A stretch of 64,000 bases of DNA, taken from IMG/VR virus record IMGVR_UViG_3300029258_002750, positions 186,001 to 250,000 of that record. The stretch is one strand, 5' to 3'. The notes under the pieces were generated by a model, which made no database searches, had not been told where the DNA came from, and saw only the letters and a list, made by a program, of their open reading frames with translations. Positions 3-23,751 of this stretch are shown in pieces. Numbering within the stretch: the first letter of the stretch is position 1; each line of letters starts with the position of its first letter. Both the position numbers and the translations under genes were made by a program.

Positions 3-56
3 TCGCTGAACATCTTCCGCAACCGGCTCAAGACCGCAATTGGAGGACAGTCGTGA
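3..56 (+). CDS. 3' end of an upstream gene (partial, ...SLNIFRNRLKTAIGGQS*)
   Basis: Open frame from the window edge ending in TGA 54-56, overlapping the GTG start of the next gene (GTGA coupling). Confidence 0.4.
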   Translation, partial: SLNIFRNRLKTAIGGQS

Positions 57-607
57 GTTTCTACGATCGCATCGTCGAAGGCGGCGGCTACGACGACCCG
101 CCCGACCTTTCCGAGTTCCAGCGCCAGGTGCTCAGGGCTGCGCGGGCGACGCCCAGCGTGAGTGGCACGGGCCGGTTTATCGGCGGAAAGGCGGCGGGTT
201 CAGTCATCAAGACCATGCGCAAGCAGGGCGTCACCGTGAAGGCGGCGGAGGGCAAGAAGAAGGTAGAGAAGGCGCTCGCCCAGCTCCACAAGCGCGGCCT
301 AGTCTGGACCCGGCGCGAGGGTACCTGGTCCGGCAAGGCAGGTGGCGAGGTCTTCCACACGCGCGTCTCCACGCCATCCGCAACCTCGATCAAGAGGGGC
401 GGCTACGTCGACCTGTTGCTCAAGAAGCTGAAGAAGGCTGGCATCAAGACGGCGACGACGTGCCAGCTCGACTACAGCAAGACCCTGAACCGGCGCGAGG
501 GGATCGGTATGTCCATCGCCGATGTCGTGAAGCTCGCCGCACTTCCGTCCTTCAAGCTCCCGACGAAGGACGAAGCCCGCGCCCACAGGCACGCGAAGGG
601 GAAGTAG
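53..607 (+). CDS. Basic hypothetical protein, candidate internal head protein
   Basis: 184-aa Lys/Arg-rich ORF, GGAGG upstream, coupled to both neighbours. N-terminus MSFYDRIVE resembles the T4 capsid-targeting sequence (MKTYQEFIAE). Confidence 0.7.
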   Translation: MSFYDRIVEGGGYDDPPDLSEFQRQVLRAARATPSVSGTGRFIGGKAAGSVIKTMRKQGVTVKAAEGKKKVEKALAQLHKRGLVWTRREGTWSGKAGGEVFHTRVSTPSATSIKRGGYVDLLLKKLKKAGIKTATTCQLDYSKTLNRREGIGMSIADVVKLAALPSFKLPTKDEARAHRHAKGK

Positions 608-1092
608 TGGTCCCGTACGGTCTGGCAGAAGGAGCGCTCATCTACGCGGCCGATGGTTCGATCATCATGCCAACGTCGATCGAGAAGCTCGCCAAGACCG
701 GGGAGCAGCCCGAGGTTCTCGCCTACCACAAGAAGAAGGACAGGATCGTCAAGGTTGTGGCGCAGTACCCACGGATGGCCAGTACCGAGGCCGAGATCGT
801 GGAGGTGACCCTCTTCAACATGCACAAGCTCCGATGCACGCCGAACCACAAGGTGCTCACGACGGTTGGCCTCATCGAAGCCAGGGACCTGAGGACGGGC
901 GACAAGCTCGTTAGTCCGTCTGCCGGAGCGGGCATTCCCGGCCAGTTCATGTTCACCGCCAACAGGGCCAATCGCGTGGCGGTCGCGGGCGACCCTGTCC
1001 CAGCTGGAAAAGCGCGTGTGTTCGACATCACCACCACGACGGGCAACTTCGTTTGCGAGGGTATCGTCGTCTGCGGCAAGGATGCGAAGTGA
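607..1092 (+). CDS. Free-standing Hint (intein-like) domain protein, splicing residues degenerate
   Basis: GTG at 607 overlaps the upstream TAG. Block A-like GLAEGALIYAADGS, block B LRCTPNHKVLT, blocks F/G VFDITTTTGNFVCEGIVVCG. Has G where Cys1 is expected and CG where His-Asn is expected. Confidence 0.8.
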   Translation: MVPYGLAEGALIYAADGSIIMPTSIEKLAKTGEQPEVLAYHKKKDRIVKVVAQYPRMASTEAEIVEVTLFNMHKLRCTPNHKVLTTVGLIEARDLRTGDKLVSPSAGAGIPGQFMFTANRANRVAVAGDPVPAGKARVFDITTTTGNFVCEGIVVCGKDAK

Positions 1093-1826
1093 GCATTGCG
1101 GGCGACACGGTTATCCACACCCTCACCGGCCCGCAAACCGTCACTCGCATCGCCAACACCGACAAGGCTGTTCACGTCTTCGCCTGGAACGGGGCGAAGA
1201 TCGCGGGCGGCCGGATCTACATTCCGCCGACACCGTGCCGCGCTCAGACGTATCGCGTCGTCCTCGACAACGGCCGCAGCTTGCGGGTCAGCGCCGACCA
1301 GCGCTTCCTGGTATTCACCAAGAGCGAACCGAAGGGCGTTGAGACCGTTCAGGCGATAGACCTCAAGCCGGGCACGAGCCTGCTCCCCCTCTACCTCGGT
1401 CGTATCAAGCAAGGTGGCTATCCGACCTTCAAGCAGGTGGGCGATCATTGGAAGCGATCGGCGTGCGCCAGCGACCGGAAAAGATGGCGGAGCGTCGCTC
1501 GAATGGTGTATGAATGGGCCTCTGGCGACGCTCTCGTTCCTGGGCTTCGGGTGAAGCACAAGGACGGCAATCCTGACAACTGCCACCCCAAGAATCTCTA
1601 CATCGACGGGACCCCACGGCCGGGGAACCGCAGCAAGCTCAATCGTCTTCTCGATCTCCAGAGGAAGATCATGCCAGGCAACCACAAGGTCGCCGGTTGC
1701 GAACCCTGGATCGAAGAGGAAGATGTATACGACGTCCTTCCACAAGACTGCTCGAGCGTTGCGGCGACCGAGGTCTTCTTGGGGGTCGGCGAGGAGACTG
1801 GAGGACTAGATGGCCCTCCGCGATAG
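1089..1826 (+). CDS. Free-standing intein-like protein (Hint + HNH endonuclease domain), splicing residues degenerate
   Basis: GTG at 1089 (GTGA overlap). Block A MSIAGDTVIHTLTG, degenerate block B LRVSADQRF, LKPGTSLLPLY, HNH-like ARMVYEW...VKHKDGNPDNCHPKNL, block F NHKVAGCEPWIEEEDVYDV. No terminal HN. Confidence 0.75.
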   Translation: MSIAGDTVIHTLTGPQTVTRIANTDKAVHVFAWNGAKIAGGRIYIPPTPCRAQTYRVVLDNGRSLRVSADQRFLVFTKSEPKGVETVQAIDLKPGTSLLPLYLGRIKQGGYPTFKQVGDHWKRSACASDRKRWRSVARMVYEWASGDALVPGLRVKHKDGNPDNCHPKNLYIDGTPRPGNRSKLNRLLDLQRKIMPGNHKVAGCEPWIEEEDVYDVLPQDCSSVAATEVFLGVGEETGGLDGPPR

Positions 1827-3711
1827 GGCGGTCAAGGCGCTCCGAAACGTGTTCGGCGCTCCTCAAGCGGAGCGCGCCAAAGCCGACTCGCCCTCGGTCG
1901 CGGCGATGCGGCATCACGTGCCCAGCATGTTCACGGTCTGGGGACGCGAGGACATCGGCGGCCTGCTCACCGTCTCCCAGTCCCTCATGGATCGGTTCGC
2001 CGACTACGAGGCGATGGAGGAGTACCCAGACATCAACTCGGCCTTCCACTACTTCGCTAATGACGCGACTCAGCCCTCGGTCAAGGACGGCCGATGCATC
2101 TGGGTCCAGTCGGAGGACAGTGCGATCAAGGGCCTGGGCGACGACCTGATGCATCGGACGCTGCGGGTCGAGGATGAGATCTGGCCGCAGGCGTACGGTC
2201 TCGGGATGATGGGCAACGACTATCTCGAGCTGCTCATCACCGAGAACGGCGTCGTCGGGACCAACACGCTCCCCGTGCCCACGATGAGGCGCGTCGAGCG
2301 GCTTGACGGCGGCCTGATCGGCTTCGTACAGGACGTGACCGGCCAGTTCACCGCGAACAGCCAAGAGCTGCGGCGGATGCTCGCAGGCAATGTCGAGATC
2401 CCCAGGAGCCTCGCCCTGTTCGAGGACTGGCAGGTCGCCCACTTCCGACTGCGCGCGACGCGGCGGCGCATTCCCTACGGCGTCTCCGTCGCCGAGGGCG
2501 CCCGTTGGATCTGGAAGCGCCTGGTGATGCTCGAGGACAGCGTGCTGATCTACAAGCTCACACGCGCGCCAGCTCGCTACGCCTACTACATCGACACGAC
2601 GGACGTGCCATCCGATCAGGTCGGGTCGTTCCTCCAGAAGGCGAAGAGGGACCTCAAGAAGAAGCGGATGGTCAACCCCCGCTCCGGTCGCCTGGATCTC
2701 CGCTACAACCCGCTGGCGAGAGACGAGGACTTCTTCATCGCCGTTCGCGAGGGCCGCGAGCTGGCCCGGGTGGACGTCCTCTCCGGTCCCGACTACCAGG
2801 CTGTCGATGACGTGGAGTACTTCAAGCAGATGCTCCATGCGACGCTGAAGGTCCCGCGCGCCTACCTCGGCAAGGACGAGGCTCCGCCGTCGAAGTCGAT
2901 CCTCTCGAACGACGACGTGCGGGCGGCCAGGGTGACCTTGAACCTCCAGCGCGAGCTGAAGATCGGCTGGGAGCGGATCATCCGCACGCACCTGGCCGCG
3001 CGAGGCGTGCGCGATCCCTGGAAGCCCGAGTTCACGATCGAGATGACCATTCCTTCGGGGATCTGGGAGCTGTCGGCCTACGAGACCCTCAATGCGGCGG
3101 CCGACTATGCGAGCCGGATCCAGCCGTGGGTCAGTACCCGCTGGATTCAGGAGAAGATCCTCAAGTTCTCGGAGGAGGAGATCAAGGAGATCGAGAAGCA
3201 GCAGAAGAAGGACTCCGAAGAAGAGCAGTCCGGCGACCTGCCCAGCTATGCGATGGGCGGTGCCCAGGGAGGTCCGCCGGAGGCTCCGCCACCTGGCGGG
3301 GAGGAAGAGCCCGAGGAACCCGCGCCCGAGGAGAAGGAGGGCGAGGAGGAAGAGGGGACTCCCAAGCCGAAGCCTGCGCCCAAGCCTGCGCCGAAGCCCA
3401 GGGCTCCTGCGGTCGGGAAGTCGAAGAAGGCGACGCCGGAGGAGATGAAGCGGTGGGACTATGAGCGGCGGCTCGAGGAGTGGAAGTACAGGGAGTCGAA
3501 CCGGCGGCACGCCGAGATCATGGACAAGCTCGGCCAGCTGACAAAGGATGATCCGGGCTTCGCCAGGCGCGATCGGGAGCGCCGTGCGTTCTTCGAGGAC
3601 GTGCGCGGCCTACTCCGGCGAACCAACGGCGGCGGCATCGCTGTACCGCCTGGGGGGAAGTTCTCCCGGAAGGAGCTGCTCTCGATGTCCCGAAGATTCC
3701 ACGGCCGGTAG
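1810..3711 (+). CDS. Portal protein (T4 gp20-like)
   Basis: gp20-family motifs DYEAMEEYPDINSA, LEDSVLIYKLTRAPARYAYYID, YNPLARDEDFFIAVREG. GGAGG RBS. Position before core, protease and capsid genes. Confidence 0.93.
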   Translation: MALRDRAVKALRNVFGAPQAERAKADSPSVAAMRHHVPSMFTVWGREDIGGLLTVSQSLMDRFADYEAMEEYPDINSAFHYFANDATQPSVKDGRCIWVQSEDSAIKGLGDDLMHRTLRVEDEIWPQAYGLGMMGNDYLELLITENGVVGTNTLPVPTMRRVERLDGGLIGFVQDVTGQFTANSQELRRMLAGNVEIPRSLALFEDWQVAHFRLRATRRRIPYGVSVAEGARWIWKRLVMLEDSVLIYKLTRAPARYAYYIDTTDVPSDQVGSFLQKAKRDLKKKRMVNPRSGRLDLRYNPLARDEDFFIAVREGRELARVDVLSGPDYQAVDDVEYFKQMLHATLKVPRAYLGKDEAPPSKSILSNDDVRAARVTLNLQRELKIGWERIIRTHLAARGVRDPWKPEFTIEMTIPSGIWELSAYETLNAAADYASRIQPWVSTRWIQEKILKFSEEEIKEIEKQQKKDSEEEQSGDLPSYAMGGAQGGPPEAPPPGGEEEPEEPAPEEKEGEEEEGTPKPKPAPKPAPKPRAPAVGKSKKATPEEMKRWDYERRLEEWKYRESNRRHAEIMDKLGQLTKDDPGFARRDRERRAFFEDVRGLLRRTNGGGIAVPPGGKFSRKELLSMSRRFHGR

Positions 3712-3723
3712 GCGCAAACCTAG

Positions 3724-3752
3724 TTGCGCAGGATAGATGTAGACCGTAGAAA
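3724..3752 (+). promoter_or_regulatory. Possible sigma70-type promoter (TTGCGC-N17-TAGAAA)
   Basis: Intergenic, 17-nt spacer. The -35 overlaps a GCGCAA/TTGCGC inverted repeat. The -10 lacks the final T. Confidence 0.3.
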
Positions 3753-3773
3753 GTTAGGAAGGGAGCGCCTGTC

Positions 3774-4607
3774 GTGAACGACGCAGCCATCATCAGTCTC
3801 CTGCGCAACGTGAGGCAGGCCGACGACGTCCTCTCGCGTCTGCGGGATGGGTCGCTCGAGGTCCGGCGGGAGCGGATCGCCGAGGCGTTAGCCAGCCCCG
3901 ACTGGGCTGCCGGACCGGCGCAGCTCCTTGCCACGTACCCGCACCACGCGCTCATCGAGAAGAACGACATCCTGATGCGCGTCCGGGTCGAGGAGGAGGA
4001 CGGCAAGATCGAGTTGGGCGAGGTGGAGGTGTTCGACATCCCCGACAAGGTGGGGGATGTCGGTGCCGAGGTCATGGAGACAGCCAAGGCGGCCGTCGAC
4101 CTGATCCTGGCGGACGACTACGACGCTGCGACCCCGCTTGTTGCGGGCATTGCCAACGCGCTCAACTACAAAGGCGATCTCGGCGAGCAGGTCGCGACCG
4201 AAGTGTCCAAGCGTTCCATCCAGCGGGACGCCTGGTGGCACAAGGTCGTGCGCGAGGGAGTCGGCGAGGACGCGCAGATCGAGATCCCTGCTCCTCGCGC
4301 GAACGACCTGCCGGGGAGTATCGACGATCTCCGAGAGGCGCTGACGACGGCCGCGAGGACCGTGGCGGAGGTCGTGCAGCAGATCCCCGGGGAGCGCGCC
4401 ACGAAGGAGATCGTGGAAGCGGCCCGGGACATTGCGGCAGACATGAAGTACGCCATTCAGGCGCTCGGTGCCGCGAGCCGTGACGACGAAGCCGAGCTGG
4501 CAGGCGTCTACGAGGGCGTGTCCGGCATGGCGAGCCACCTTCTGATGGGTGCCAAGTTCCTCGCGAGCCTGGCCGAGCAAGACACCGCGAACGCAACGAA
4601 GGAGTAG
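3774..4607 (+). CDS. Hypothetical protein (head assembly region)
   Basis: 277-aa ORF with genome-typical codon usage, AAGGGAG upstream of GTG. Confidence 0.75.
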   Translation: MNDAAIISLLRNVRQADDVLSRLRDGSLEVRRERIAEALASPDWAAGPAQLLATYPHHALIEKNDILMRVRVEEEDGKIELGEVEVFDIPDKVGDVGAEVMETAKAAVDLILADDYDAATPLVAGIANALNYKGDLGEQVATEVSKRSIQRDAWWHKVVREGVGEDAQIEIPAPRANDLPGSIDDLREALTTAARTVAEVVQQIPGERATKEIVEAARDIAADMKYAIQALGAASRDDEAELAGVYEGVSGMASHLLMGAKFLASLAEQDTANATKE

Positions 4608-4611
4608 GACC

Positions 4612-5862
4612 ATGATGCTGGGAGACCAAGGACCCCAGACTTCGATCGAGGAGGATCTTCAGGCTCTCGGAATGGGTCACCTTCTCGCTGAGGCCGACAC
4701 TTGCCCGTCCAGCAAGGGCGACGGGGATGACGACGACGAGGACGAGGACGAGGGCAAGGAGGAACAGACCGAGGCGCGCGAGTACGACGAGGAGACCGGC
4801 CGTACCGAGATCGAGGTTCGCGCCGAGGACGAGGACGAGTACGAGATCGACGAGGACGAGTTCTTCGAGATCGTCGGCGAGTTCATGGAGTCGCTCGATC
4901 TGGACGAGGACCAGGTCGACGACGCCCTCGAGAGCGAGGAGTTCACGGACATCTTCGTCGAGGCCCTCGTGGCGAACGATGCCCTGGACGAGATCGACGA
5001 GGACGAGGAGGACGAAGAGATCGAGGAGGACGAAGACGAGATCGACGACCCCAGGATGGAGGCCGCTGCCGATCTGCTCGGCCTGTTCTACGATCATCTC
5101 CAGACCATGACCGAGGACGACGACAGGCCCAACTACGACGACCTGGTCGGAGTGATCGAGGCGTTCGAGTACCTCACGGACGGGATCCTCGACGAGACCA
5201 AGCGGACGATGGGTCTCCGCGCCCTCCGCAAGGCCCGCCGGACGAAGAGTCGCCTGGCCAAGCGCGGGAAGATGAAGCGGTCGACCTTCAAGGCCGCGAA
5301 GCGCGGCCGGATGATGATCGGCGGCCACGAGTTCAAGGCCGGTGCCGCGTCCCGCGCCCAGTTCCGCAAGCTGATGCGGAGCGCGAGCCCGAGGCGCCGG
5401 AAGGCCCTCAAGAAGCGGCTCAAGGCTCAGATGGGCGTGACCTCCAAGGACGTCAAGGCCCGGATCACCGGCAAGAAGATGGCAGCCGACGTGGAGCCCC
5501 AGGGCAGCCCGATCTCCGAGCTGGTGCAGCACCTCAACGACCTGCGCGAGGCCGTCCAGAGCGACGACTCCGCCGCCGAGGAGCTGGTCGACGGGCTCAG
5601 GAGCGTCTTCGAGACGGCGACCACCTTCTACGAGCGGATCGCGGAGGAGGTCAGCAGCGACGAGTCGATCGAGGAGGAGGACAAGGAGGACGACCCGCGC
5701 GTGGCGATGGGTCGGCACCTCGAGTCGATCGCCGAGGACTCGGCGGCCGTCGCCCAGCGGATCGTCGAGGGAGAGGCGGACATCAACGACGCGGCCGACG
5801 ACCTGCGCGCCCTGGCGGCGGACCTCGACGATGCGATGGAGGCGATGAAGGGGATCGAGTAG
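4612..5862 (+). CDS. Acidic/basic prohead core protein (T4 gp67/gp68-like position)
   Basis: ATG at 4612 after AAGGAG. Very acidic flanks around a K/R-rich core (LRALRKARRTKSRLAKR...RRRKALKKRLK). Lies between portal and protease like T4 core genes. Confidence 0.6.
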   Translation: MMLGDQGPQTSIEEDLQALGMGHLLAEADTCPSSKGDGDDDDEDEDEGKEEQTEAREYDEETGRTEIEVRAEDEDEYEIDEDEFFEIVGEFMESLDLDEDQVDDALESEEFTDIFVEALVANDALDEIDEDEEDEEIEEDEDEIDDPRMEAAADLLGLFYDHLQTMTEDDDRPNYDDLVGVIEAFEYLTDGILDETKRTMGLRALRKARRTKSRLAKRGKMKRSTFKAAKRGRMMIGGHEFKAGAASRAQFRKLMRSASPRRRKALKKRLKAQMGVTSKDVKARITGKKMAADVEPQGSPISELVQHLNDLREAVQSDDSAAEELVDGLRSVFETATTFYERIAEEVSSDESIEEEDKEDDPRVAMGRHLESIAEDSAAVAQRIVEGEADINDAADDLRALAADLDDAMEAMKGIE

Positions 5863-5915: not shown

Positions 5916-8747
5916 ATGACGACAAACAGGCGCGTGCTGGTCGACCACTACGGTCCTCCCATGAAGATGCAGATCCTCGAGGGGAAGGACGGCGGCAAGC
6001 TCGTTGTCGAGGGCAAGATCGGCCACGTCGACAAGCCCACGGCGAACAACCGCGTCTACCCCCGCTCGGTCATGGAGAGGGAGATCGGAAGACTCCGGCC
6101 CCGGATCGAGCAGGGGTCCGTCATCGGGGCAGTCGATCATCCCGGTGATGGCAAGTGCCTCGGCCTGGGGACTCCGGTTCTCATGGCCGACGGTCGCGTG
6201 CTCCCGGTCGAGGAGATCGTCACCGGCGACCGCCTCATGGGACCGGATGGCAAGGCGCGGACGGTGCTGGCGACGACCGCTGGCACCGGCCCGCTCTACC
6301 GGGTTGACCCCAAGAAGGGCGATCCGTGGGTCTGCAACGACAAGCACGTCCTGACGCTGGTCCACACGTCCAACGGCGAGGTCGTGGACATCCCGGTCGA
6401 GGACTACCTCGACAAGAGCATCTACTACAAGAGCCGCTACAAGCTGTTCAGCACCGGCGTCGAGCGGTTCGAGGACGAGGCCGAGCCGCCCAGCGTCGAT
6501 CCCTACTTCCTGGGCGCCTGGTTCGGTGATGGTTCCAAGACGAAGATCAACTTCGTCGCGCCCGAGACGATGGGTCTGTCGGCTGTGCGCGCTGTGGCGA
6601 TCACGACCATCGACCCGGAGATCCGGGAGATGTGCGAGGACATCGCCGCCAAGTGGGAGGTTCGCGTCAACGAGGTTCCCAAGACCACGGGGACCGAGGC
6701 CGTCACGCTCTACCTGTCCACTGACAAGGGGCAGGACAACCGCCTGCTCCGCGCTGTGCGCGATCTCGTCGGGCCGGACATGCGCGTTCCCGATCAGATC
6801 GTGCGCGGGAGCCGCGAGACCCGTCTCCAGTTCCTCGCCGGTCTGATCGACACCGACGGGCATCTCCAGCACAACTGCTTCTACATCACCCAGAAGCGCG
6901 CCGACTACGCACAGGTCGCGCACCGGATCGCCAAGTCGCTCGGCTTCCAGGCCGTGCTCTCCACGCGCAAGGTGCAGGGCTACAGCGACGACTACCACAC
7001 GCTCACCATCTGGGGCGACGTGGAGCAGATCCCGACCCGTCTGGAGCGCAAGAAGGCCGAGCTGCGCGAGCAGCGGAAGGACGCGCTCAGGACCGGGTTT
7101 ATCGTCACGCCCATCGGAACCGGCGACTACGCCGGGTTCGAGCTGGACGGCGACGGTCGGTTCCTGCTGGGCGACTTCACCGTCAGCCACAACAGCCGGA
7201 TCCGGGAGGGTGGCTGCATCGTCCGAGGTCTCTGGATCGAGGACGATGGCACGATCAACGGCAAGTTCGAGGTCGTTGAGGAGGCCGACGCGGGTCGCAA
7301 CCTCGCCGCGTTCCTGCGGCGGGGTGCGGCCATCGGCATGTCCAGCCGGGGCATGGGTTCCACGTCCACCGGCCCCCAGGGCTGGGACGTGGTCGGCGAG
7401 GACTTCAAGCTCAACACGTGGGACTTCGTGGCCGATCCGGCCTGCCACGACGCCTACCCGTCCGTGATCTCCGAGGACGTGGACGGCGAGGGCAAGCCCA
7501 CCGGCAAGCTCGTGGTCAACCCCGAGGAGGTCAACGAGACGGTGCTGCGGCAGCACTTCCCCGACGCGGTTCGCGTGATCGAGCAGCACGCGATGCGCGT
7601 GGCCTCGGAGACGGCGGCCGAGGACGCCGACGACCGGGTCAACGGCGAGGTCGAGTCCCAGAAGGAGGAGATCTACAAGAAGGCGATCGACGAGCTGCGC
7701 GAGGACTTCGCGGCCAAGCTCGTCCGCGCGCTGGCCGAGATGCGCACGAAGGTCGAGGAGGACGTCCGCAGCGACTTCGCGAGCGACCCCGAGACGGCTG
7801 GCGCCAAGCTGGCCCTCAAGAAGATCGCCGAGATGGTCAACCCCTATGCCCCGTCGCCGGACGAGAAGAAGGTCTTGGACGAGAAGGACGCCAAGATCGA
7901 GGAGCTGTCCCAGGCAGCGGACGAGCAGGAGAAGAAGGCCCGCGATGCCGAGCTGCGCGTCGTCCGCGTCGAGGAGAAGACGCGCGAGCTGGCCTTCCAG
8001 CTCTACGTCGAGCAGATGATCGGCGGTCGCGAGGACCGCGAGAACGTCCGCGACCTGATCGGCGACCTCTCCGCGTGCAAGAACGCCGAGGAGCTGAAGA
8101 CGCGAGTCGAGTCTGCGCTGACCTCGATCGAGGAAGCCCAGATGTCGGCGAAGAACGAAGCGAACGAGGAGGCCGAGGCTGCGATCCGGCTCGCGGAGGA
8201 GCGAGCGAGCGACGCCGAGATCGCGCTTGCCCAGGCGGAGGCACGCGAGAAGCGCTACCGCGCCGAGGTCACCAAGCGGTTCGAGGCTCTGGAGTCCCAG
8301 CTGACCTCGGCCATCGAGAGCAAGGACGAGGAGATCGGTGCGGCCCGTGCCCGTATCGAGGAGCAGGCCGACATGCTGGAGCGGGCGGTCACCGCAGGCA
8401 CCCGCGCGAAGCTCCTGGCCTACGCGAGCGACCGCACGGTCGGTCACCCGCACCGCGACGCGATCATGGAGGACGTGAAGAACGACGAGCTGACGTCCAT
8501 CAAGGAGATCGATGCTCGCGCTTCCGAGACCGAGCGTCGAGCGCAGGAGCCGGGCGGCCCGATGGAGCGGGTGCGCCGGTCCATGAGTGCCGGTCGCGAG
8601 CACATCACCGAGGACGAGCGACGCGCGTTCGAGGCGAGCGAGAACCAAGGTTTCGTCGGTGGGGACGATGCTTCCCGGGACCTGGAGTACCTGGGAACGT
8701 CCTTGACCGAGCAGCAGCGCTTGGCCGGGAGGACCCGGCGAGCTTGA
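5916..8747 (+). CDS. Prohead protease (T4 gp21-like) with intein, fused to a C-terminal coiled-coil scaffold (gp22-like)
   Basis: TANNRVYPRSVMEREI, GAVDHP (catalytic His), AIGMSSRGMGS (catalytic Ser), WDFVADPA. Long E/A/K/R-rich C-terminal region. Directly upstream of the capsid gene. Confidence 0.9.
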   Translation: MTTNRRVLVDHYGPPMKMQILEGKDGGKLVVEGKIGHVDKPTANNRVYPRSVMEREIGRLRPRIEQGSVIGAVDHPGDGKCLGLGTPVLMADGRVLPVEEIVTGDRLMGPDGKARTVLATTAGTGPLYRVDPKKGDPWVCNDKHVLTLVHTSNGEVVDIPVEDYLDKSIYYKSRYKLFSTGVERFEDEAEPPSVDPYFLGAWFGDGSKTKINFVAPETMGLSAVRAVAITTIDPEIREMCEDIAAKWEVRVNEVPKTTGTEAVTLYLSTDKGQDNRLLRAVRDLVGPDMRVPDQIVRGSRETRLQFLAGLIDTDGHLQHNCFYITQKRADYAQVAHRIAKSLGFQAVLSTRKVQGYSDDYHTLTIWGDVEQIPTRLERKKAELREQRKDALRTGFIVTPIGTGDYAGFELDGDGRFLLGDFTVSHNSRIREGGCIVRGLWIEDDGTINGKFEVVEEADAGRNLAAFLRRGAAIGMSSRGMGSTSTGPQGWDVVGEDFKLNTWDFVADPACHDAYPSVISEDVDGEGKPTGKLVVNPEEVNETVLRQHFPDAVRVIEQHAMRVASETAAEDADDRVNGEVESQKEEIYKKAIDELREDFAAKLVRALAEMRTKVEEDVRSDFASDPETAGAKLALKKIAEMVNPYAPSPDEKKVLDEKDAKIEELSQAADEQEKKARDAELRVVRVEEKTRELAFQLYVEQMIGGREDRENVRDLIGDLSACKNAEELKTRVESALTSIEEAQMSAKNEANEEAEAAIRLAEERASDAEIALAQAEAREKRYRAEVTKRFEALESQLTSAIESKDEEIGAARARIEEQADMLERAVTAGTRAKLLAYASDRTVGHPHRDAIMEDVKNDELTSIKEIDARASETERRAQEPGGPMERVRRSMSAGREHITEDERRAFEASENQGFVGGDDASRDLEYLGTSLTEQQRLAGRTRRA
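6156..7193 (+). mobile_element. Intein with LAGLIDADG homing endonuclease (346 aa) in the prohead protease
   Basis: Starts CLGLGTPVLMADG and ends GDFTVSHN followed by Ser(+1). LAGLIDADG motifs YFLGAWFGDGS and FLAGLIDTDG. Confidence 0.95.
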
Positions 8748-8761: not shown

Positions 8762-10195
8762 ATGTTCACGGCTCGAGGCATGTTAGCCGAGAACCTCGGA
8801 GACTCGACTGCCATCGCGGACGAACCGGCCGTCAGCCGGTACGTGCGCAAGTGGCACAAGATGCTCCGGGGTCTCAACGAGGAGATGGGGCCGGGCTACG
8901 CGCCCTCCCACGTCAACTACGTTCGGGGCCTCTGCGCCCTGATGATCGAGCAGGAGGTGCGTCACCTCAAGCGGCTCAACGAGGAGACTCGCGCTCTCTC
9001 GGTCGGGCCGTTCATGAAGTACGTCCTGCCCGTCATCCGCCGGACCGCGATCCGCCTGGTCGCGACGCAGATCGCGTCCGTTCAGCCGATGACCGGCCCG
9101 ATCGGCGGCATCGCGTTCTACCGGCCCCGCTACGCGTCGGACAAGGGCTCCGTCGCCGCCGGGACCGAGATGAACAAGGTTCTGTCGAAGTGGTACAGCT
9201 CGAACTTCATCGACGGCGAGCGGTTCGGGACGGGCGACGGCGGGACCACCGTCTTCTCCCGGAACCTGGCGTGGCCGCGTCCTCGCCAGTCCACCGTCGT
9301 CGTGAAGGTCAACGGCGTCGTCAACGCGACCGACAACGGCGCTGGCGCGTTCACGGTCGTGGCGGGCACCCCGATGGCGGGCGGCAGCGGCACGGTCAAC
9401 TACGCGTCGGGCCAGATGTCGCTCACGTTCGGCACCGCTCCGGCGCTGAACGACGTCATCCTGGTCGAGTACCGCTACGACAACGAGCTGAACGCTCGGA
9501 TCCCCGAGGTCCAGCTCGACATCCAGCTCCAGAGCATCGAGGCCGAGAGCCGGAAGCTCAAGAGCCTGGCGAGCGTCGAGGCGGCCGACGACCTCCGCGC
9601 TCTGTGGGGCAGGGACATCGACGCCGACCTGGTCGCGCAGATGTCGGACGAGATGACGGCGGAGATCGACCGTGAGATCGCCGGAACGGCGCTCAACGCG
9701 GTCGAGCCCATCGCGGTCGTCAAGTGGGACCGGGCCACGCCCTCGGGCGTCAACGATCCCGACCACCTGAAGAGCCTCGTGATCCGCATGTCGCGGGCGA
9801 GCCACATCGTGCACCGTCGCACGCAGCGGGCTCCCTGCAACTGGGCGATCACCAGCTCCGAGGTGGCGAGCCTGCTCGACAACATCGACGGCTTCTCGGC
9901 CGTCGAGGAGGGTCACGTCTACCAGGGCGGGATCCTCAAGCAGGGCGTCCTCAAGAGGAAGTGGCTGATCTTCGTCGATCCGCTCTTCCCGGCCAACCAG
10001 ATCCTCATGGGATACCAGGGGCCGAGCATCCTCGACACGGGCCTGATCTACAGCCCGTACATCCCGATGGAGATCACGCCGAACTTCATCGATCCCAACG
10101 ATTTGAGCCTCCGGCGGGCGGTCAGGACCAGGCACAAGATCACCCTGACCCGCGCCGAATTCTTCGCCAGGGTGGAGATCGACAATCTCCTCTAG
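8762..10195 (+). CDS. Major capsid protein (T4 gp23-like)
   Basis: IASVQPMTGPIGGIAFY, ESRKLKSLASVEAADDL, MTAEIDREI, GLIYSPYIPM. Strong GAGGAGGT RBS. Confidence 0.95.
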   Translation: MFTARGMLAENLGDSTAIADEPAVSRYVRKWHKMLRGLNEEMGPGYAPSHVNYVRGLCALMIEQEVRHLKRLNEETRALSVGPFMKYVLPVIRRTAIRLVATQIASVQPMTGPIGGIAFYRPRYASDKGSVAAGTEMNKVLSKWYSSNFIDGERFGTGDGGTTVFSRNLAWPRPRQSTVVVKVNGVVNATDNGAGAFTVVAGTPMAGGSGTVNYASGQMSLTFGTAPALNDVILVEYRYDNELNARIPEVQLDIQLQSIEAESRKLKSLASVEAADDLRALWGRDIDADLVAQMSDEMTAEIDREIAGTALNAVEPIAVVKWDRATPSGVNDPDHLKSLVIRMSRASHIVHRRTQRAPCNWAITSSEVASLLDNIDGFSAVEEGHVYQGGILKQGVLKRKWLIFVDPLFPANQILMGYQGPSILDTGLIYSPYIPMEITPNFIDPNDLSLRRAVRTRHKITLTRAEFFARVEIDNLL

Positions 10196-10240: not shown

Positions 10241-10278
10241 GGAGGGGCGACGGTTTCGGCCGTCGCCCCTTCTGCTTG
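10241..10278 (+). terminator. Stem-loop with UUCG loop after the capsid gene
   Basis: GGAGGGGCGACGGT-TTCG-GCCGTCGCCCCTTC (14 bp, two G-U pairs) followed by a weak U tract (TGCTT). Confidence 0.7.
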
Positions 10279-10304
10279 TGAAGCGTCGAGCGCCGATCTA
10301 TATT
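10276..10304 (+). promoter_or_regulatory. sigma70-type promoter for the HNH gene (TTGTGA-N17-TATATT)
   Basis: Near-consensus hexamers, 17-nt spacer, GGAGG RBS and GTG start downstream. Confidence 0.6.
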
Positions 10305-10322
10305 AGTTGGTGGAGGTTCGCT

Positions 10323-11954: not shown

Positions 11955-12551
11955 ATGCCATTCGTAGCCAAGAGCCGTAGTTCTGGAAAGCGCTTGGATC
12001 TGACGCAGATCGATGAGCCGCAAAGGCTCGATCGTCGGGATGTGATGTGCCAACTCTGTGGCGGAGACATGGTACTCAAGTGCGGCCAGATCATTCGGCC
12101 ACACTTCGCCCATCTGGCGCGAACGTGTTCCTCTGACTACAGGTTTCACCCAGAGTCGTTGGACCACCTGATCGCGAAACAGGTTGTAGTTTCCCTGCTT
12201 CGCCGTTCATATGCCGATTTCCTACCAGACATCCTGCTGGAGTACGCGATCGAGGATCGCAAGCGGGTGGCCGACGTCATGTGCATATGGTCGACCGGGT
12301 GGTGGCAGGCGCACGAAGTCCAGCTCGCGTCGATCACGCAAGGGGAGCTGGAGGAGCGTACTAATGACTACGCCGAGCAGGGTATCGACGTCCGGTGGTG
12401 GCTTGGGAAGAGGGCGGATACGCCTCGCAACCGCGAGTGGTGCAACCGCAAGTGCGGTGAAGTCGGTCTCGTCTCGTTCTACGAGGAAGACGATGTTGGA
12501 GAATCGCTTCCGGCACGCGCTGGTTGGGTGCGAATCAAGCACGGAGACTAA
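11955..12551 (+). CDS. CoiA-like PD-(D/E)xK nuclease with N-terminal Zn ribbon
   Basis: CQLCGGDMVLKCGQIIRPHFAH, ESLDHLIAK, RVADVM...AHEVQLASIT...RTNDYAEQGIDVRWWLG match competence CoiA-family motifs. Confidence 0.8.
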   Translation: MPFVAKSRSSGKRLDLTQIDEPQRLDRRDVMCQLCGGDMVLKCGQIIRPHFAHLARTCSSDYRFHPESLDHLIAKQVVVSLLRRSYADFLPDILLEYAIEDRKRVADVMCIWSTGWWQAHEVQLASITQGELEERTNDYAEQGIDVRWWLGKRADTPRNREWCNRKCGEVGLVSFYEEDDVGESLPARAGWVRIKHGD

Positions 12552-16075: not shown

Positions 16076-16078
16076 CCG

Positions 16079-18107: not shown

Positions 18108-18114
18108 GTGTCCC

Positions 18115-19226: not shown

Positions 19227-19269
19227 GGTGCTCGGTCCGCAATCAGCCAAGAGAGCTTAGGAGAGCGCC

Positions 19270-22050
19270 GTGGCCCAACTCGAAATCCTCAGCCCAGGTG
19301 TCTACGGCTTCGAGAAGGAGCCGTCCCGTGCCCCCGAGGGCATCTCTCCCGCGAAGGCCGGGTTCGTCGGCTGGACCGACGAGGGTCCGAGCAATACGCC
19401 AGTCGAGGTTCGCTCGACCGTCGAGTTCGAGCGTGTCTTCGGACCGATCTCGTCGTTAGGTCTGGTCCCGATCGGGATCCAGGGCTTCTTCGGGAACGGT
19501 GGCCAGCGGGCCTACATCGTCCGCGTGGTCCCGTCCGACGCCATCTCGGCGTGGGCGGACATCGACCCGACGCCCGGTCCCACCAAGTGGACCTTCACCA
19601 TGAAGGGGGAGGGGACCTGGGGCAACGACACCCGGATCCACATCCGAGGGAACCGCAACTTCCTCGATCGGACGGCCGGTGCCGAGCAGTGGGAGAAGTT
19701 CGACCTGCTCGTCCTCCGTCCTTCGGAGTACGACGCGTCGATCCTCGTCTCCGAGGAGACCTACGAGGCGGTCCAGTTCACCGACCCGGACGCGGCCGAC
19801 TACGTCACCACCGTCCTGACCGATCCCCGGAAGCCGTCTCAGCTGGTGGAGATCACCGAGGGCGCGGGCGGCACGCCCAGCGGGCTGATCCCCTCCTACG
19901 AGGAGGACGAGGTGCTGGTGGCCGGTGGCTCGGTCAACGGCATCGACACCAACTTCTCCGGGACGCTCGCCCAGGGCGCCTGCCTGGACAACACGCTGCG
20001 GATCGTCGCGGCCGACGCCCAGGTGGACGACGAGGCGCAGACGCCGACACCGGCGATCGACGGGATCGTGACGACCTTCGCGATCACCCTGCCGACGACG
20101 CCGGTGCTCGACGGCAGCCTGCGGATGTTCTACGCCAAGGTCGGCGACCAGGTCGACAACCTCGGCAGTGGTCCGTTCGCGGTCGGCACGGTCAACGGCA
20201 TCGACACGGCCTTCCAGATCGCGGCCGGTGCGCTGACCGCTCCGGTCCACCGGGAGAACACCGTCTTCCGTATCCGCTACGCGGTACCGGCTGGCGGATC
20301 GCCGTGGGTGCCCATCGGCGCGGCCACGCCCGGCCAGATCTACGACCTCGCCTCCACGCCGATTCCAGGCGTCACCCCGTCCACTCCGGTTCACCCTGGC
20401 ACGCTGGCCATCGCGGTGACGACTGTGGACGACGGTGCCCAGGTCATCCTCGACGACGGCGCTGGGAACCTCATCAACCCGCTCGTCTTCCAGGGCGGCA
20501 CCGGGACCATCGACTACACCACCGGCGCCATGACCGGGCAGACGCTCGGCTCGCTCGGCGGCGGCCTCGCCGGTGGCTCCCCGGTGACGGTGACCTACGA
20601 TGAGTCGGACATCATCACCAAGGCGGCGGCCACCGACAACATGGCCCAGGCGGTGGCTCTCGCGGGCGCGATCGGCGCGGGCACGAACGCGATCGACCTG
20701 GTGGACAGCGTCACGGCGCCTACCCAGAGCGGCCTGATCGACTTCACGACCTCGACTCCGCCGCAGAGCGGCACCAACATCCTGGTGGACTACGTGCCGC
20801 TCGGGATCGTGAACGGCGACGTGGCCGGGGATCTGACCGAGCTGGGCGGTGTCGCGGGCGCGGCCGGGTCGGCCGACTACGTCACCGGCGCCGTGGCGCT
20901 CACCACGCTGCTGGCTCCGAGGGCAGCCACCACGATCGACGCCGACTACCAGTCGGGCCAGGTCGCGACCGACGACGGCCTCGGCAACCTGGTCGGGGAT
21001 GTGGACGCGGCCGGGACCAACACGATCGACTACGACACTGGCGCCTACGACATCACCTGGGACAGCGCACCCACGGCGGGCACCGACATCCTGGGCAACT
21101 ACACCGGCCTCGCGAGCGACGTCGAGTGGCAGATGTCCGGCGGCGTCAACGGCTCTGCCGTCACCCGCGCGGACATCTCGGCCGCCGCGCTCGAATCCAG
21201 CAAGCAGGGCATCTACGCCCTGGATCTGGTCGAGGAGCCGCTCAACGTCGTGGTGCCCGACTTCGAGGGTTCGGAGTTCGTCCAGTTCGACATGGTGCAG
21301 TTCGCCAAGAACCGGCCCGACCTGCGCTACCTGATCATGGGCTACGCCAACGGGACGACCGTGAGCGAGGCGATCAAGTACATCCAGGTGGACCAGGCGT
21401 GGGACGAGAAGATCGGGGCGATGTACTACCCCAACGTCTACTTCGTCAACCCGCTCACCGATCGGGTCGAGCTGGTGCCGATCACTCCGCTCGTGGCGGG
21501 CGTCTACGCACGCACGGCGAACACCAAGAACGTCGGGAAGGCTCCGGGCGGTGTCGAAGACGGCGCGCTCAACGCGGTTGGCGTCGTCGCCGCCGAGTTC
21601 GTGCTGGAGAAGTCGGACCGGGACAACCTCTACCAGTCGCGGATCAATCCGATCATCTCCAGCGACGCGACCGGGATCGCCGTCTGGGGAGTGCGCAGCC
21701 TCTCGCGCGAGACGCGCTGGCGCTACATCAACGCGCGCACGCTGCACAACTTCCTGATGTACGCGACCAGCCTGAACCTCCAGTGGGCGGTGTTCGAGAA
21801 CAACGGCCCGCCGCTCTGGGCGAAGATCGAGACCGCGCTGAAGGGCTACTACGGCAGCCTCTTCCGGCTCGGCTACTTCGCAGGCCAGAACGAGGACGAG
21901 GCGTTCTTCGTGACGTGCAACGCCACGAACAACAACGCCTCGACCGTGGCGGAGGGCAAGGCGATCATCGACATCGGATTCAACCCCGGCACCCCGGCGG
22001 AGTTCATCACCTTCACCCTCCAGCAGCCGGTCGGCACGCAGACCTCGTAG
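19270..22050 (+). CDS. Tail sheath protein with large inserted surface domains
   Basis: N-terminal LSPGVYGFE...GFVGWTDEGPSNTPVEV...EFERVFG. C-terminal RDNLYQSRINPI...VWGVRSL...RYINAR...PGTPAEFITF. Confidence 0.93.
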   Translation: MAQLEILSPGVYGFEKEPSRAPEGISPAKAGFVGWTDEGPSNTPVEVRSTVEFERVFGPISSLGLVPIGIQGFFGNGGQRAYIVRVVPSDAISAWADIDPTPGPTKWTFTMKGEGTWGNDTRIHIRGNRNFLDRTAGAEQWEKFDLLVLRPSEYDASILVSEETYEAVQFTDPDAADYVTTVLTDPRKPSQLVEITEGAGGTPSGLIPSYEEDEVLVAGGSVNGIDTNFSGTLAQGACLDNTLRIVAADAQVDDEAQTPTPAIDGIVTTFAITLPTTPVLDGSLRMFYAKVGDQVDNLGSGPFAVGTVNGIDTAFQIAAGALTAPVHRENTVFRIRYAVPAGGSPWVPIGAATPGQIYDLASTPIPGVTPSTPVHPGTLAIAVTTVDDGAQVILDDGAGNLINPLVFQGGTGTIDYTTGAMTGQTLGSLGGGLAGGSPVTVTYDESDIITKAAATDNMAQAVALAGAIGAGTNAIDLVDSVTAPTQSGLIDFTTSTPPQSGTNILVDYVPLGIVNGDVAGDLTELGGVAGAAGSADYVTGAVALTTLLAPRAATTIDADYQSGQVATDDGLGNLVGDVDAAGTNTIDYDTGAYDITWDSAPTAGTDILGNYTGLASDVEWQMSGGVNGSAVTRADISAAALESSKQGIYALDLVEEPLNVVVPDFEGSEFVQFDMVQFAKNRPDLRYLIMGYANGTTVSEAIKYIQVDQAWDEKIGAMYYPNVYFVNPLTDRVELVPITPLVAGVYARTANTKNVGKAPGGVEDGALNAVGVVAAEFVLEKSDRDNLYQSRINPIISSDATGIAVWGVRSLSRETRWRYINARTLHNFLMYATSLNLQWAVFENNGPPLWAKIETALKGYYGSLFRLGYFAGQNEDEAFFVTCNATNNNASTVAEGKAIIDIGFNPGTPAEFITFTLQQPVGTQTS

Positions 22051-22079
22051 GGGTCGGGCAGACGAGATAGGAGACTGAC

Positions 22080-22565
22080 ATGGCTCGTGCAGCGTCCACT
22101 GATCCGTATTTGAACTACAGGTTTCACGTGGTCGATCCGGCCGGGGGGCATCTCGATCCCGTCGCCGGGTTCTCGACCGTCTCGACGCCCGAGGTCAGCA
22201 TCGACCCGGCGGAGTACCGCGAGGGCGTGTACCGCTGGACCCGGAAGTACCCGGGCATCCAGACGGTGGGCGAGTGCCAGCTGATGAAGGGCACCGTCCA
22301 GCGCGAGAGCGACTTCTACAAGTGGCTCATCGACGTGATCAACGGCGCGGCGGACACCTACCGCTCCGACCTGATGATCATGGAGTTCCACATCACCGAC
22401 GAGTTCGGGATCGACGGGTCGCCTTCCCGGATCATGCGCCTGCGCGAGTGCTGGCCCTCCACGGTGAAGCCGATGGCGGACAAGGACGCCACCGGCTCCG
22501 AGGTCGCTCTCCAAGAGCTGACCCTCACCGTCGAGGAGCTGGAGGTGGAGATCATCTCGGCGTAG
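22080..22565 (+). CDS. Tail tube protein (T4 gp19/eCIS-like)
   Basis: DPYLNYRFHV...AGFSTVSTPE...EYREG...KYPG...CWP...EVALQELTLTVE. Confidence 0.9.
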   Translation: MARAASTDPYLNYRFHVVDPAGGHLDPVAGFSTVSTPEVSIDPAEYREGVYRWTRKYPGIQTVGECQLMKGTVQRESDFYKWLIDVINGAADTYRSDLMIMEFHITDEFGIDGSPSRIMRLRECWPSTVKPMADKDATGSEVALQELTLTVEELEVEIISA

Positions 22566-22606
22566 CGTCGAGGTCAGCGCAGACCAGACACCAGAAAGAG
22601 GACGTG

Positions 22607-22915
22607 ATGAGCCACTTCGACAAGCTGGCGGGCCTGACCGAGCAGGAAGAGCAGGGCGATCAGGACGACGGCCGGAACCCGCTGCACGAGATGATGGGCA
22701 TGATGCCCCGCCGCTACCTCAACAAGCGCGACCTCCAGTACGCGCTCGAGGATGCGGCGACCACGTGCGATCGGATGTGGAAGGAGAAGAAGCGCTTCGC
22801 GAAGGGCGACGAGCTGGGAAAGATGAAGCCCAAGTACGACGCCCTCGTTTCCGCGCTCAAAGCCGCCGCAAAGGCGGCCGAGGCGTGCGCCGACGCCCAG
22901 GACGACAAGTACTAG
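22607..22915 (+). CDS. Hypothetical helical protein, candidate internal head protein
   Basis: ATG 22607 after AGAGGA. N-terminus MSHFDKLAGLTE. Confidence 0.65.
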   Translation: MSHFDKLAGLTEQEEQGDQDDGRNPLHEMMGMMPRRYLNKRDLQYALEDAATTCDRMWKEKKRFAKGDELGKMKPKYDALVSALKAAAKAAEACADAQDDKY

Positions 22916-22920
22916 GCGTC

Positions 22921-23751
22921 GTGAGTCTGTTCGAGCGGGTCGTTCCATCTGACGCCCGCCTTCTGCACGAGGGCATCTTCGATCCGCATATCCTGAAAGC
23001 GATCTTTCTGGGCGGCGGCATGGGATCCGGCAAATCGTGGACTGCCGGAACGATGTTCGGGAAGCTCGGCAGCCAGCTCGGCGGAGCCTTCGGGCTCAAG
23101 ACCCTGAGCGTGGATGAGATCTACGCTTGGCGCGTCAAGCAGAAGGGCCTCGATCTCAAGACGGCCTTCGAGGTGCCGACCGACAACCCGAAGTTCCCAT
23201 CGATCGGGAAGGAGCTGCACGACCGCTCGTGGTACACGATGATGAATCAGCGCGCGCACTTCGCGCGTGGGCGACTCGGCGTGATCGTCGATGGCACGGC
23301 CAAGAACCCCACCTACATCCTGAAAGGCAAGAAGGCGCTCGAAGACCTCGGCTACGACTGCTCGATGGTGATGGTGGTCACACCGATCGAAGTGGCTCGC
23401 GAGCGCAACCAGGCGCGCGGCCGGACCGTCCCGGATGCGGACGTGGTCGCCTCGCATCAGGCGGTCGCGAAGGCTGGTCAGACCTACAAGAAGAAGTTCG
23501 GCCATCGCTACTACGAGATCGAGAACAAGGGGACGTACGACACGGGCAGCGCCGAGTTTCGTACCGAGATCGAGCCGAAGATGCACCGGATGGCCTCGAA
23601 GATTCTCGCCAAACCGCTAGAGAACCCGAAGGGGAAGGCGTGGGTCGAGGGCCAACTGGCCGGAGCGCCTGAACACCTCAAGCGGAAGGTCTACTCCGGC
23701 CTGGGCATTCGGCCGAAGAAGAGGAAGCGGCGGAAGCTCAAGACGCGGTAG
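22921..23751 (+). CDS. P-loop kinase (Zeta-toxin/AAA_33-like)
   Basis: HEGIFDPHILKAIFLGGGMGSGKSW (Walker A), GVIVDGTA, VARERNQARGRTVP. GTG start at 22921. Confidence 0.8.
   Translation: MSLFERVVPSDARLLHEGIFDPHILKAIFLGGGMGSGKSWTAGTMFGKLGSQLGGAFGLKTLSVDEIYAWRVKQKGLDLKTAFEVPTDNPKFPSIGKELHDRSWYTMMNQRAHFARGRLGVIVDGTAKNPTYILKGKKALEDLGYDCSMVMVVTPIEVARERNQARGRTVPDADVVASHQAVAKAGQTYKKKFGHRYYEIENKGTYDTGSAEFRTEIEPKMHRMASKILAKPLENPKGKAWVEGQLAGAPEHLKRKVYSGLGIRPKKRKRRKLKTR

What the first reader, a model, noticed from the sequence alone, without database searches (positions are those of the whole stretch)
53..23751. Shared capsid-targeting-like N-terminus on three scattered genes
Seen: MSFYDRIVE (53), MSHFDKLAGLTE (22607) and MSLFERVVPSDARLLHE (22921) share M-S-x-[FY]-[DE]-[RK]-[ILV], followed by an [IL]-x-E site. 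Established: T4 internal proteins use an N-terminal capsid-targeting sequence (MKTYQEFIAE) removed by gp21 after (I/L)-x-E, and this phage encodes a gp21-like protease. Inference: these three proteins are packaged and injected with the DNA.
Basis: inference. Interest (0 to 1): 0.6.

Follow-up and report, generated by a model that had tools for sequence, protein, structure and literature searches.

The report
Shared capsid-targeting leader on phage proteins
An uncultured 275-kb phage with T4-type head genes puts the same short N-terminal tag, ending in a protease cut site, on at least ten unrelated proteins; the tag most likely marks them for packing into the capsid and delivery into the host, as T4 does with its internal proteins.

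Summary
The window is part of a complete 275,101-bp virus record. A six-frame scan finds M-S-x-[FY]-[DE]-[RK]-[ILV] at ten start codons, about 0.1 expected by chance. Three are in the window, and there are two near-variants. The ten bodies are unrelated to one another. Every leader ends in [ILVM]-x-E at residues 9-17, against 18% of other N-termini. Eight of ten predicted mature proteins are basic (pI 9.7 or more).

The phage has T4-type portal, gp21-family protease (interrupted by an intein), gp23-type capsid protein, sheath and tube. The capsid protein starts with its own 10-residue peptide ending L-A-E.

The third window gene is a PNK/zeta-like P-loop kinase. In 100 of 102 anchored homologues the domain follows [LIVM]-x-E, although the leaders differ by lineage. 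Cultured T4-related phages carry T4-CTS-like leaders on it. The Agrobacterium phage Atu_ph07 homologue, Gp53, is in the published virion proteome.

It is not proven: there are no proteomics for this phage and injection is untested. I file it as a new member of a known kind, with unusual cargo (kinase, HAD, 2H phosphoesterases).

The parts
53..607 (+). Leader gene A, 184 aa. The leader MSFYDRIVE occupies 53-79. The predicted mature protein is basic (pI 10.6) and is a clade-restricted orphan. It lies 1.2 kb upstream of the portal gene.
   Evidence: no family in Pfam, PHROGs or NCBIfam
22607..22915 (+). Leader gene B, 102 aa. The leader MSHFDKLAGLTE occupies 22607-22642 and belongs to a second leader subclass, shared with genome gene 72102-72389. 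The predicted mature protein has pI 5.8. It is an orphan.
22921..23751 (+). Leader gene C, 276 aa. The 17-residue leader ends L-H-E (22921-22971). It is followed by a P-loop kinase of the PNK/zeta-toxin clade and a basic C-terminal tail.
   Evidence: Pfam AAA_33 33.8 bits and Zeta_toxin 32.3 bits, both over cut-off; AF2 pLDDT 83.9 with residues 1-20 at low confidence; Foldseek top hits are Pnkp kinase, then zeta toxins
23728..23748 (+). C-terminal RRKLKTR, a copy of a second recurrent terminal motif (RRPLKTL) seen in six proteins of the genome.
5916..8747 (+). Prohead protease of the gp21 family (Peptidase_S77), fused to a long acidic coiled-coil C-terminal part. A LAGLIDADG intein interrupts it at residues 81-426 (nt 6156-7193).
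   Evidence: intein-free orthologues in two relatives join exactly at K80/S427; the intein-free domain hits only T4 gp21 (5JBL), E 3e-13
8762..10195 (+). Major capsid protein of the gp23 type. Its first ten residues end L-A-E (8762-8791). Further conserved L-x-E sites lie at residues 38-40 and 72-74, ahead of the region that aligns with mature T4 gp23*.
1810..3711 (+). Portal protein of the T4 gp20 family.
   Evidence: Portal_T4 E 4.9e-51; phrog_213
3774..5862 (+). Two ORFs between portal and protease (277 aa, and about 416 aa from 4612). The second is extremely acidic and then basic. They are candidate core or scaffold proteins, rich in L/I-x-E.
   Evidence: no family found
19270..22565 (+). 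Tail sheath (19270-22050) and a tail-tube-like gene (22080-22565), directly upstream of leader genes B and C.
23761..24288 (+). T4 gp19-type tail tube paralogue directly downstream of leader gene C. Genes B and C are therefore inserted between two tube genes.
   Evidence: Phage_T4_gp19 E 6.4e-17

Best explanation
The shared N-terminus is a lineage-specific counterpart of the T4 capsid targeting sequence. It is a short leader of 9-17 residues with consensus M-S-L-[FY]-[DE]-R-[VI], then 0-8 residues, then [LIVM]-x-E.

Inferred mechanism: the leader docks otherwise unrelated proteins onto the scaffold core while the prohead assembles. The gp21-family prohead protease then removes it by cutting after the Glu. 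The mature proteins, mostly basic, stay inside the capsid with the DNA and probably enter the cell with it.

Shown: the motif, its portability, the cut-site-like ending, and the T4-type head machinery. For the kinase family, also shown: lineage-specific leaders at a fixed junction, and presence of one homologue in a virion proteome.

Inferred: docking, cleavage and ejection in this phage.
For: (1) Ten strict copies and two variants are found, against about 0.1 expected, with a clean score gap.

(2) The bodies show no mutual similarity by blastp. Synonymous sites in the leader vary, so selection acts on the peptide.

(3) 10 of 10 leaders, and every strict member in relatives, have [ILVM]-x-E ending at residue 9-17, against 18% of other N-termini. 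8 of 10 predicted mature proteins have pI 9.7 or more, against 29% of proteins genome-wide with pI above 9.

(4) T4-type portal, protease, capsid protein, sheath and tube are present. The capsid protein starts with a 10-residue peptide ending L-A-E and has conserved L-x-E sites in its propeptide region across 13 relatives.

(5) The subclass ending V-L-[GA]-E matches T4's MKTYQEFIAE in length, aromatic 4, hydrophobic 7, L/I 8, small 9 and E10.

(6) Relatives at 76-95% capsid identity carry the leader on other cargo, including five such genes within 6 kb. This resembles T4 internal-protein clusters.

(7) In the kinase family, 100 of 102 anchored homologues have [LIVM]-x-E immediately before the domain, while the leaders differ by lineage. 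Melnitz and RsoM2USA carry MKTF.. and MTTF.. leaders close to T4's.

(8) Atu_ph07 AUZ94865 equals Gp53 by exact mass (87.07 against 87.08 kDa). It carries the kinase domain after V-T-E. It was found in virions with 31 peptides and was most abundant in a band where proteins of about 21 kDa run. Twelve more virion proteins of that phage, thirteen in all, share an 8-10-residue leader ending in L-x-E.

(9) The AF2 model leaves residues 1-20 outside the confident fold.
Against: There is no virion proteome or N-terminal data for this phage or its clade.

The near-invariant E17-G18 of the kinase could be structural rather than a cut site.

Relatives at 69% capsid identity (G004, 89% complete; G005) lack the motif, so it is young or replaceable.

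Two predicted mature cargoes are acidic or neutral. The variant at genome 148804 has no early L-x-E.

The first seven residues show only pattern-level likeness to the T4 sequence, not homology.

The protease specificity is inferred from family membership and from the capsid propeptide. It was not measured.
Confidence: 0.7

Rival explanations
1. The leader is a virion-incorporation tag that is not cleaved, or it directs proteins to another virion compartment such as the tail lumen or baseplate rather than the head interior.
For: Genes B and C sit between two tail-tube genes and gene A sits beside the portal. The portal itself begins M-A-L-R-D-R-A-V, loosely leader-like. No cleavage data exist.
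Against: Seven other members lie far from the tail genes. Every leader ends in the Glu-terminated motif typical of gp21-family sites. The capsid propeptide shares that ending.
Confidence: 0.12
2. The motif serves a function unrelated to virions: a degron, a chaperone or host-factor docking site, or a timing signal for a set of phage effectors made in the cell.
For: Nine of ten bodies have no known function. Enzymes such as PNK-like kinases normally act in the cytoplasm after expression (T4 Pnk; established knowledge).
Against: The kinase homologue in Atu_ph07 is a virion protein. The co-occurrence with gp21-type machinery and the L-x-E ending is then left unexplained.
Confidence: 0.1
3. The similarity is a by-product of descent or of nucleotide-level constraints: duplicated 5' gene ends, a recombination hotspot, or an optimal translation-initiation region. 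On this view there is no sorting function.
For: All copies use AGY for Ser, and 7 of 10 start with GTG. Adjacent pairs share some upstream bases.
Against: AGY is the usual codon-2 Ser genome-wide, in 49 of 61 genes. Upstream regions are otherwise dissimilar, and codons 3-7 vary synonymously while the residues are kept. The motif is kept in orthologues at 60-86% identity. The L-x-E ending at variable distance is not explained.
Confidence: 0.05

Closest known systems
T4 internal proteins IPI, IPII, IPIII and their capsid targeting sequence (Mullaney and Black 1996; PMC8442874, PMC3012670)
   Same: A leader of about 10 residues sits on unrelated, mostly basic proteins. It ends in (L/I)-x-E. The phage encodes gp21-type protease and gp23-type capsid. 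The genes lie partly in clusters and vary between relatives.
   Different: The residues differ (M-S-L-[FY]-[DE]-R-V, not M-K-T-Y-Q-E-F). Leader length varies from 9 to 17. There are at least ten cargoes rather than three. The cargo includes enzymes up to 367 aa. No experimental proof exists.
T4 Alt and gp24 N-terminal propeptides
   Same: An enzyme (Alt) or shell protein (gp24) loses a short N-terminal peptide to gp21 (PMC5694885). Here a kinase carries the leader, and the capsid protein carries a 10-residue L-A-E peptide.
   Different: No ADP-ribosyltransferase-like cargo was found here. The enzyme is a PNK/zeta-like kinase.
Agrobacterium phage Atu_ph07 Gp53-Gp63, Gp43, Gp47
   Same: It is a jumbo phage with T4 core genes. 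Thirteen proteins with a shared 8-10-residue leader ending L-x-E are all in the virion proteome. Gp53 contains the homologous kinase domain, E 1.6e-22.
   Different: The leader is M-[KR]-W-x-Q-L-x-E. Most of those proteins are paralogues with a YRGM motif. The kinase is an internal domain of a 778-aa protein.
Propeptides of phiKZ-like giant phages (SPN3US, phiKZ, 201phi2-1)
   Same: A related protease cuts after Glu, and the propeptides are thought to target ejection proteins to the prohead (PMC5694885).
   Different: Those propeptides are mostly longer than 100 residues with A/S/G-x-E sites. Here the leaders are short, as in T4, with a hydrophobic residue at P3.

Membership tests
T4-type capsid targeting sequence / internal proteins | One short N-terminal leader shared by otherwise unrelated proteins of the same phage | tested here: met
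   Ten strict copies; no body-to-body blastp hit within the genome
T4-type capsid targeting sequence / internal proteins | The leader ends in a prohead-protease site, hydrophobic-x-Glu | tested here: met
   10 of 10 at residues 9-17, against 18% background
T4-type capsid targeting sequence / internal proteins | The phage encodes gp21-family protease and gp23-type capsid protein | tested here: met
   PF03420 over cut-off; 5JBL E 3e-13; PF07068 E 1.3e-55
T4-type capsid targeting sequence / internal proteins | Sequence likeness to MKTYQEFIAE | tested here: inconclusive
   Only positional classes are shared (M1, aromatic 4, hydrophobic 7, L/I 8, small 9, E10). Kinase homologues in Melnitz and RsoM2USA are much closer to T4
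T4-type capsid targeting sequence / internal proteins | Proteins present in virions with the leader removed | not testable with these tools
   The only indirect evidence is that the Atu_ph07 kinase homologue is in the virion proteome and runs far below its full size
T4-type capsid targeting sequence / internal proteins | The leader is sufficient to package a foreign protein | not testable with these tools
   Needs a bench test
Peptidase_S77 (T4 gp21 prohead protease) | Family profile match and conserved His and Ser motifs | tested here: met
   37.1 bits against a cut-off of 27. D-H-P and S-S-R-G-M-G-S align with the 5JBL sequence. The intein is removed in silico only by comparison with intein-free orthologues
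PNK / zeta-toxin clade of P-loop kinases (leader gene C) | Walker A, conserved Asp and lid Arg, kinase fold | tested here: met
   G32, G35, G37, K38, D65, D124, R162 and R166 are invariant in 30 sequences. Pfam hits are over cut-off. Foldseek finds Pnkp at E 2.5e-6 and zeta toxin at 6.8e-6
PNK / zeta-toxin clade of P-loop kinases (leader gene C) | Substrate (5'-OH nucleic acid, UDP-GlcNAc or NAD) | not testable with these tools
   The structural scores do not separate the subfamilies
Twin-arginine (Tat) signal, considered for RRPLKTL | N-terminal RR motif followed by a hydrophobic h-region | tested here: not met
   No hydrophobic stretch follows, and copies also sit at C-termini

The most novel reading that the evidence does not exclude
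The leader defines a capsid-delivered enzyme kit aimed at host RNA- or nucleotide-based defence. The recognisable cargoes across the clade are a PNK-like kinase, a HAD phosphatase of the 'Swiss Army Knife' RNA-repair type, and two 2H phosphoesterases that each have both H-x-T/S motifs. A second terminal motif, RRPLKTL, is present on three leader proteins and three others, and may act as a further sorting, DNA-anchoring or ejection signal. Pre-packaged end-healing or cyclic-nucleotide-degrading enzymes would act before any phage gene is expressed.
Probability: 0.2. Interest if true: 0.75.

Novelty: new member of a known kind. Interest (0 to 1): 0.55.

Why it matters
Capsid targeting sequences have been shown experimentally only in T4 and its close kin. 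Here a simple N-terminal scan of a metagenomic genome recovers a whole predicted set of packaged proteins.

The same logic, a lineage-specific leader ending in L-x-E, also sorts the published virion proteome of Atu_ph07.

This gives a cheap way to predict injected proteins in uncultured T4-related jumbo phages. Such proteins are the first phage molecules a host defence meets. It also yields a candidate tag for loading foreign proteins into such capsids.

The cargo list points to RNA or nucleotide chemistry that has not been described for packaged phage proteins.

Tried and rejected
**Complex prediction.** I submitted the intein-free protease domain of relative G003 with a 75-aa leader protein. 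The score was 0.00 and the verdict was no answer. This is neither support nor evidence against.

**Gene A structure and function.** Single-sequence AF2 of gene A gave pLDDT 51.5 and was unusable. The ESM Atlas gave no usable hit.

**Kinase by sequence.** A PDB sequence search with the kinase gave nothing meaningful.

**Homologues of genes A and B.** The word-based search found only 3-4 homologues, all from the same clade. That search sees only proteins of 0.55-1.75 times the query length, so longer fusions or fragments are not excluded. I did not use the large profile search.

**Faster evolution of leader genes.** This is not supported. Identities to relative G001 are 42-86%, against a genome median of 77%.

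**Ligase to complete an RNA-repair pathway.** PF09414 and RtcB are absent from the genome.

**AGY serine codons as a nucleotide-level signal.** Rejected, because AGY is normal at codon 2 in this genome.

**Marine 296-aa kinase homologues.** Their neighbourhood showed no recurring leader.

Full report
**What the window is.** The 64-kb window is positions 186,001-250,000 of a 275,101-bp IMG/VR virus record with direct terminal repeats, rated 100% complete, 65% G+C. Its left third is a T4-type morphogenesis module:
- portal (Portal_T4, E 4.9e-51);
- two unassigned ORFs, one extremely acidic;
- a 943-aa ORF holding a Peptidase_S77 domain;
- the major capsid protein (PF07068, E 1.3e-55);
- an HNH endonuclease;
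- tail sheath and two tail-tube genes.

The nearest cultured capsid proteins are only about 30% identical: Bacillus SP-15, Listeria LIS04 and a 595-kb uncultured phage. IMG/VR holds relatives at 69-95% capsid identity.

**The observation.** The three N-termini are exactly as described, with plausible ribosome sites and coding-type base periodicity. Scanning all six frames of the whole genome for a start codon followed by S-x-[FY]-[DE]-[RK]-[ILV] gives ten ORFs of 40 codons or more, all on the + strand. From amino-acid composition the expectation is 0.004 for true gene starts and 0.11 for every open candidate start. A matrix built from the leaders separates the ten (14.9-22.3 bits) and two variants (13.4 and 12.8 bits; genome 148804 and 150256) from all other 16,949 starts, none of which exceeds 9. 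The finding therefore undercounts the family.

**It is a portable peptide, not a gene family.** With the first 20 residues removed, the ten proteins show no similarity to each other. Only orthologue pairs between genomes match. Codons 3-7 vary at synonymous sites while the residues are kept, and the upstream DNA is mostly unrelated. The uniform AGY serine codon looked odd. However, 49 of 61 genes with Ser at codon 2 use AGY, so it needs no special explanation.

**The leader ends like a protease site.** Each of the ten, and every strict member found in relatives, has [ILVM]-x-E ending between residues 9 and 17. Only 18% of other predicted N-termini do. After that Glu, eight of ten proteins have pI 9.7-11.3, whereas the genome median is 6.1. 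T4 internal proteins are likewise described as highly basic (PMC8442874). Three members read M-S-L-[FY]-[DE]-R-V-L-[GA]-E. That is the same length as T4's MKTYQEFIAE and shares its aromatic 4, hydrophobic 7, L/I 8, small 9 and E10.

**The protease and its known substrate fit.** The 943-aa ORF carries a LAGLIDADG intein (Hom_end_hint, Hom_end). Two relatives have the gene without it, joined exactly at K80/S427. The intein-free domain hits a single PDB sequence, T4 gp21 (5JBL, E 3e-13), with the His and Ser motifs aligned. Prohead proteases of this family all cut after Glu (PMC5694885). T4's preference for L or I at P3 is established knowledge. The capsid protein begins with ten residues ending L-A-E. 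It keeps L-x-E at residues 38-40 and 72-74 in 13 relatives, upstream of the segment that aligns with the start of mature T4 gp23*.

**Relatives.** Partial genomes at 80-95% capsid identity carry two to four strict leaders each. Some are on orthologues and others on new cargo. A nucleotide pattern for the V-L-x-E subclass hits only eight IMG/VR stretches, all from the metagenomes that hold this clade. One 6-kb stretch has five leader genes. Two relatives at 69% capsid identity have none, so the leader is clade-specific. Orthologues of gene A keep the junction to G-G-G-Y-D-D while the leader drifts, including F/Y4 to H. Orthologues of gene B keep the L-T-E junction in three of four; the fourth has a diverged K-T-E ending. 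The G001 kinase has Cys at position 2 but the same L-H-E ending.

**The kinase gives the strongest comparative evidence.** Gene C passes the Pfam cut-offs for AAA_33 and Zeta_toxin. It has 108 homologues. In 100 of the 102 that contain the conserved start of the domain, [LIVM]-x-E immediately precedes it. The preceding peptide ranges from 6 to about 55 residues and differs by lineage. An AF2 model built on 30 sequences (pLDDT 83.9) places the first strand at residue 26 and leaves residues 1-20 at low confidence. Foldseek ranks the Clostridium thermocellum Pnkp kinase first and zeta or PezT toxins next, so the substrate stays open.

The family occurs in several cultured T4-related phages:
- In Methylophilales phage Melnitz (Kyanoviridae) the leader is M-K-T-F-A-E-L-Q-E.
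- In Ralstonia phage RsoM2USA it is M-T-T-F-K-E-Y-L-L-E, and three neighbouring genes have similar leaders.
- In Agrobacterium phage Atu_ph07 the domain sits after V-T-E inside a 778-aa protein that starts M-K-W-N-D-L-N-E.

Its computed mass of 87.07 kDa identifies that protein as Gp53 of the published virion proteome. Gp53 had 31 unique peptides and 45.5% coverage, and was most abundant in band 9, where proteins of about 21 kDa run. Gp54-Gp63, Gp43 and Gp47 were matched in the same way by mass. All are virion proteins and all begin with an 8-10-residue leader ending L-x-E. The paper does not discuss this.

**Cargo.** Nine of the ten proteins in this genome match no family. Genes A and B have only 3-4 homologues among 5.8 billion sequences. 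Where domains are visible, they concern nucleic-acid ends or nucleotides:
- the kinase;
- a HAD_SAK_1 phosphatase at genome 94297-95037;
- a 663-aa 2H phosphoesterase in relative G002;
- a 151-aa 2H candidate in another relative.

Each 2H protein has both H-x-T/S motifs. No RNA ligase or RtcB is encoded. An RNA-repair or anti-signalling kit is therefore only a possibility.

**Verdict.** The motif is real and selected. The T4-like targeting-and-cleavage reading is the best explanation (0.7). Injection follows only by analogy. This is a new member of a known kind. Its practical value is as a predictor of packaged proteins in uncultured T4-related jumbo phages.

Noticed in passing
window 23728-23748; genome 62788, 72153, 80548, 104725 (minus strand), 185194: A second short motif, RRPLKTL, recurs near the N- or C-termini of six proteins, three of which are leader proteins. 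Synonymous sites vary, so it is a peptide-level signal. Kinase orthologues of the clade also end in RR-x-LKT. It is not a Tat signal and its function is unknown.
   Followed up: partly
window 6156-7193: A LAGLIDADG intein interrupts the prohead protease gene at D-H-P-G-D-G-K / S. Relatives G002 and G003 lack it, while G001 and G004 have it.
   Followed up: yes
L055:3801-4828 (relative G001, minus strand): The kinase orthologue of relative G001 carries an insertion of about 1 kb inside its P-loop, starting G-G-G-M-G / C. Two database gene calls start inside it and end ..H-H-N / S-G-K-S. This looks like an intein in a predicted packaged enzyme.
   Followed up: partly
window 610-1826: Two free-standing ORFs lie between leader gene A and the portal. 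One has an intein-splicing (Hint) domain. The other has weak HNH_3 and Hint hits. Portal ORFs are 1080 aa in G001 and 1583 aa in G003, against 633 aa here. This may reflect inteins but was not checked.
   Followed up: partly
genome 93662-95037 (L004:2662-4037): The leader at 93662 is a remnant. An HNH_3 homing endonuclease gene on the minus strand (93725-94216) separates it from a HAD_SAK_1 gene whose start repeats about 25 nt of the leader end (V-L-x-x-E-D-R-G). The annotated 212-aa ORF is mostly antisense to the HNH gene. The same layout is found in a near-identical relative (L074).
   Followed up: yes
genome about 94810 (L004:3810); L074:3001-3903: A leader-like S-L-Y-D-R-I-[IV]-E lies inside the HAD ORF, with GAG where a start codon would be. 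The relative has 65 extra residues after it, and this genome has a deletion between two [IV]-E sites.
   Followed up: partly
L081 (Atu_ph07, MF403008.1 30000-62000): Thirteen proteins of the published virion proteome share an M-[KR]-[WL]-x-x-L-x-E type leader. Most also carry a YRGM motif suggestive of ADP-ribosyltransferases. The source paper does not mention this.
   Followed up: partly
relative G003 (L045-L050): Four genes in G003 share another N-terminus, M-[DE]-Q-[LV]-A-[DE]-[IL]. It ties with the leader as the most frequent N-terminal pattern there.
   Followed up: no
window 10278-11429 and 11955-12551: A double HNH endonuclease lies directly after the capsid gene, and a CoiA-like nuclease lies nearby. 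The structural module is rich in mobile elements.
   Followed up: no
window 8600-8747: The protease-scaffold ORF ends with a conserved L-G-T-S-L-T-E-Q in this genome and in G003. This may be a C-terminal autocleavage site like those reported for phiKZ and SPN3US proteases.
   Followed up: no
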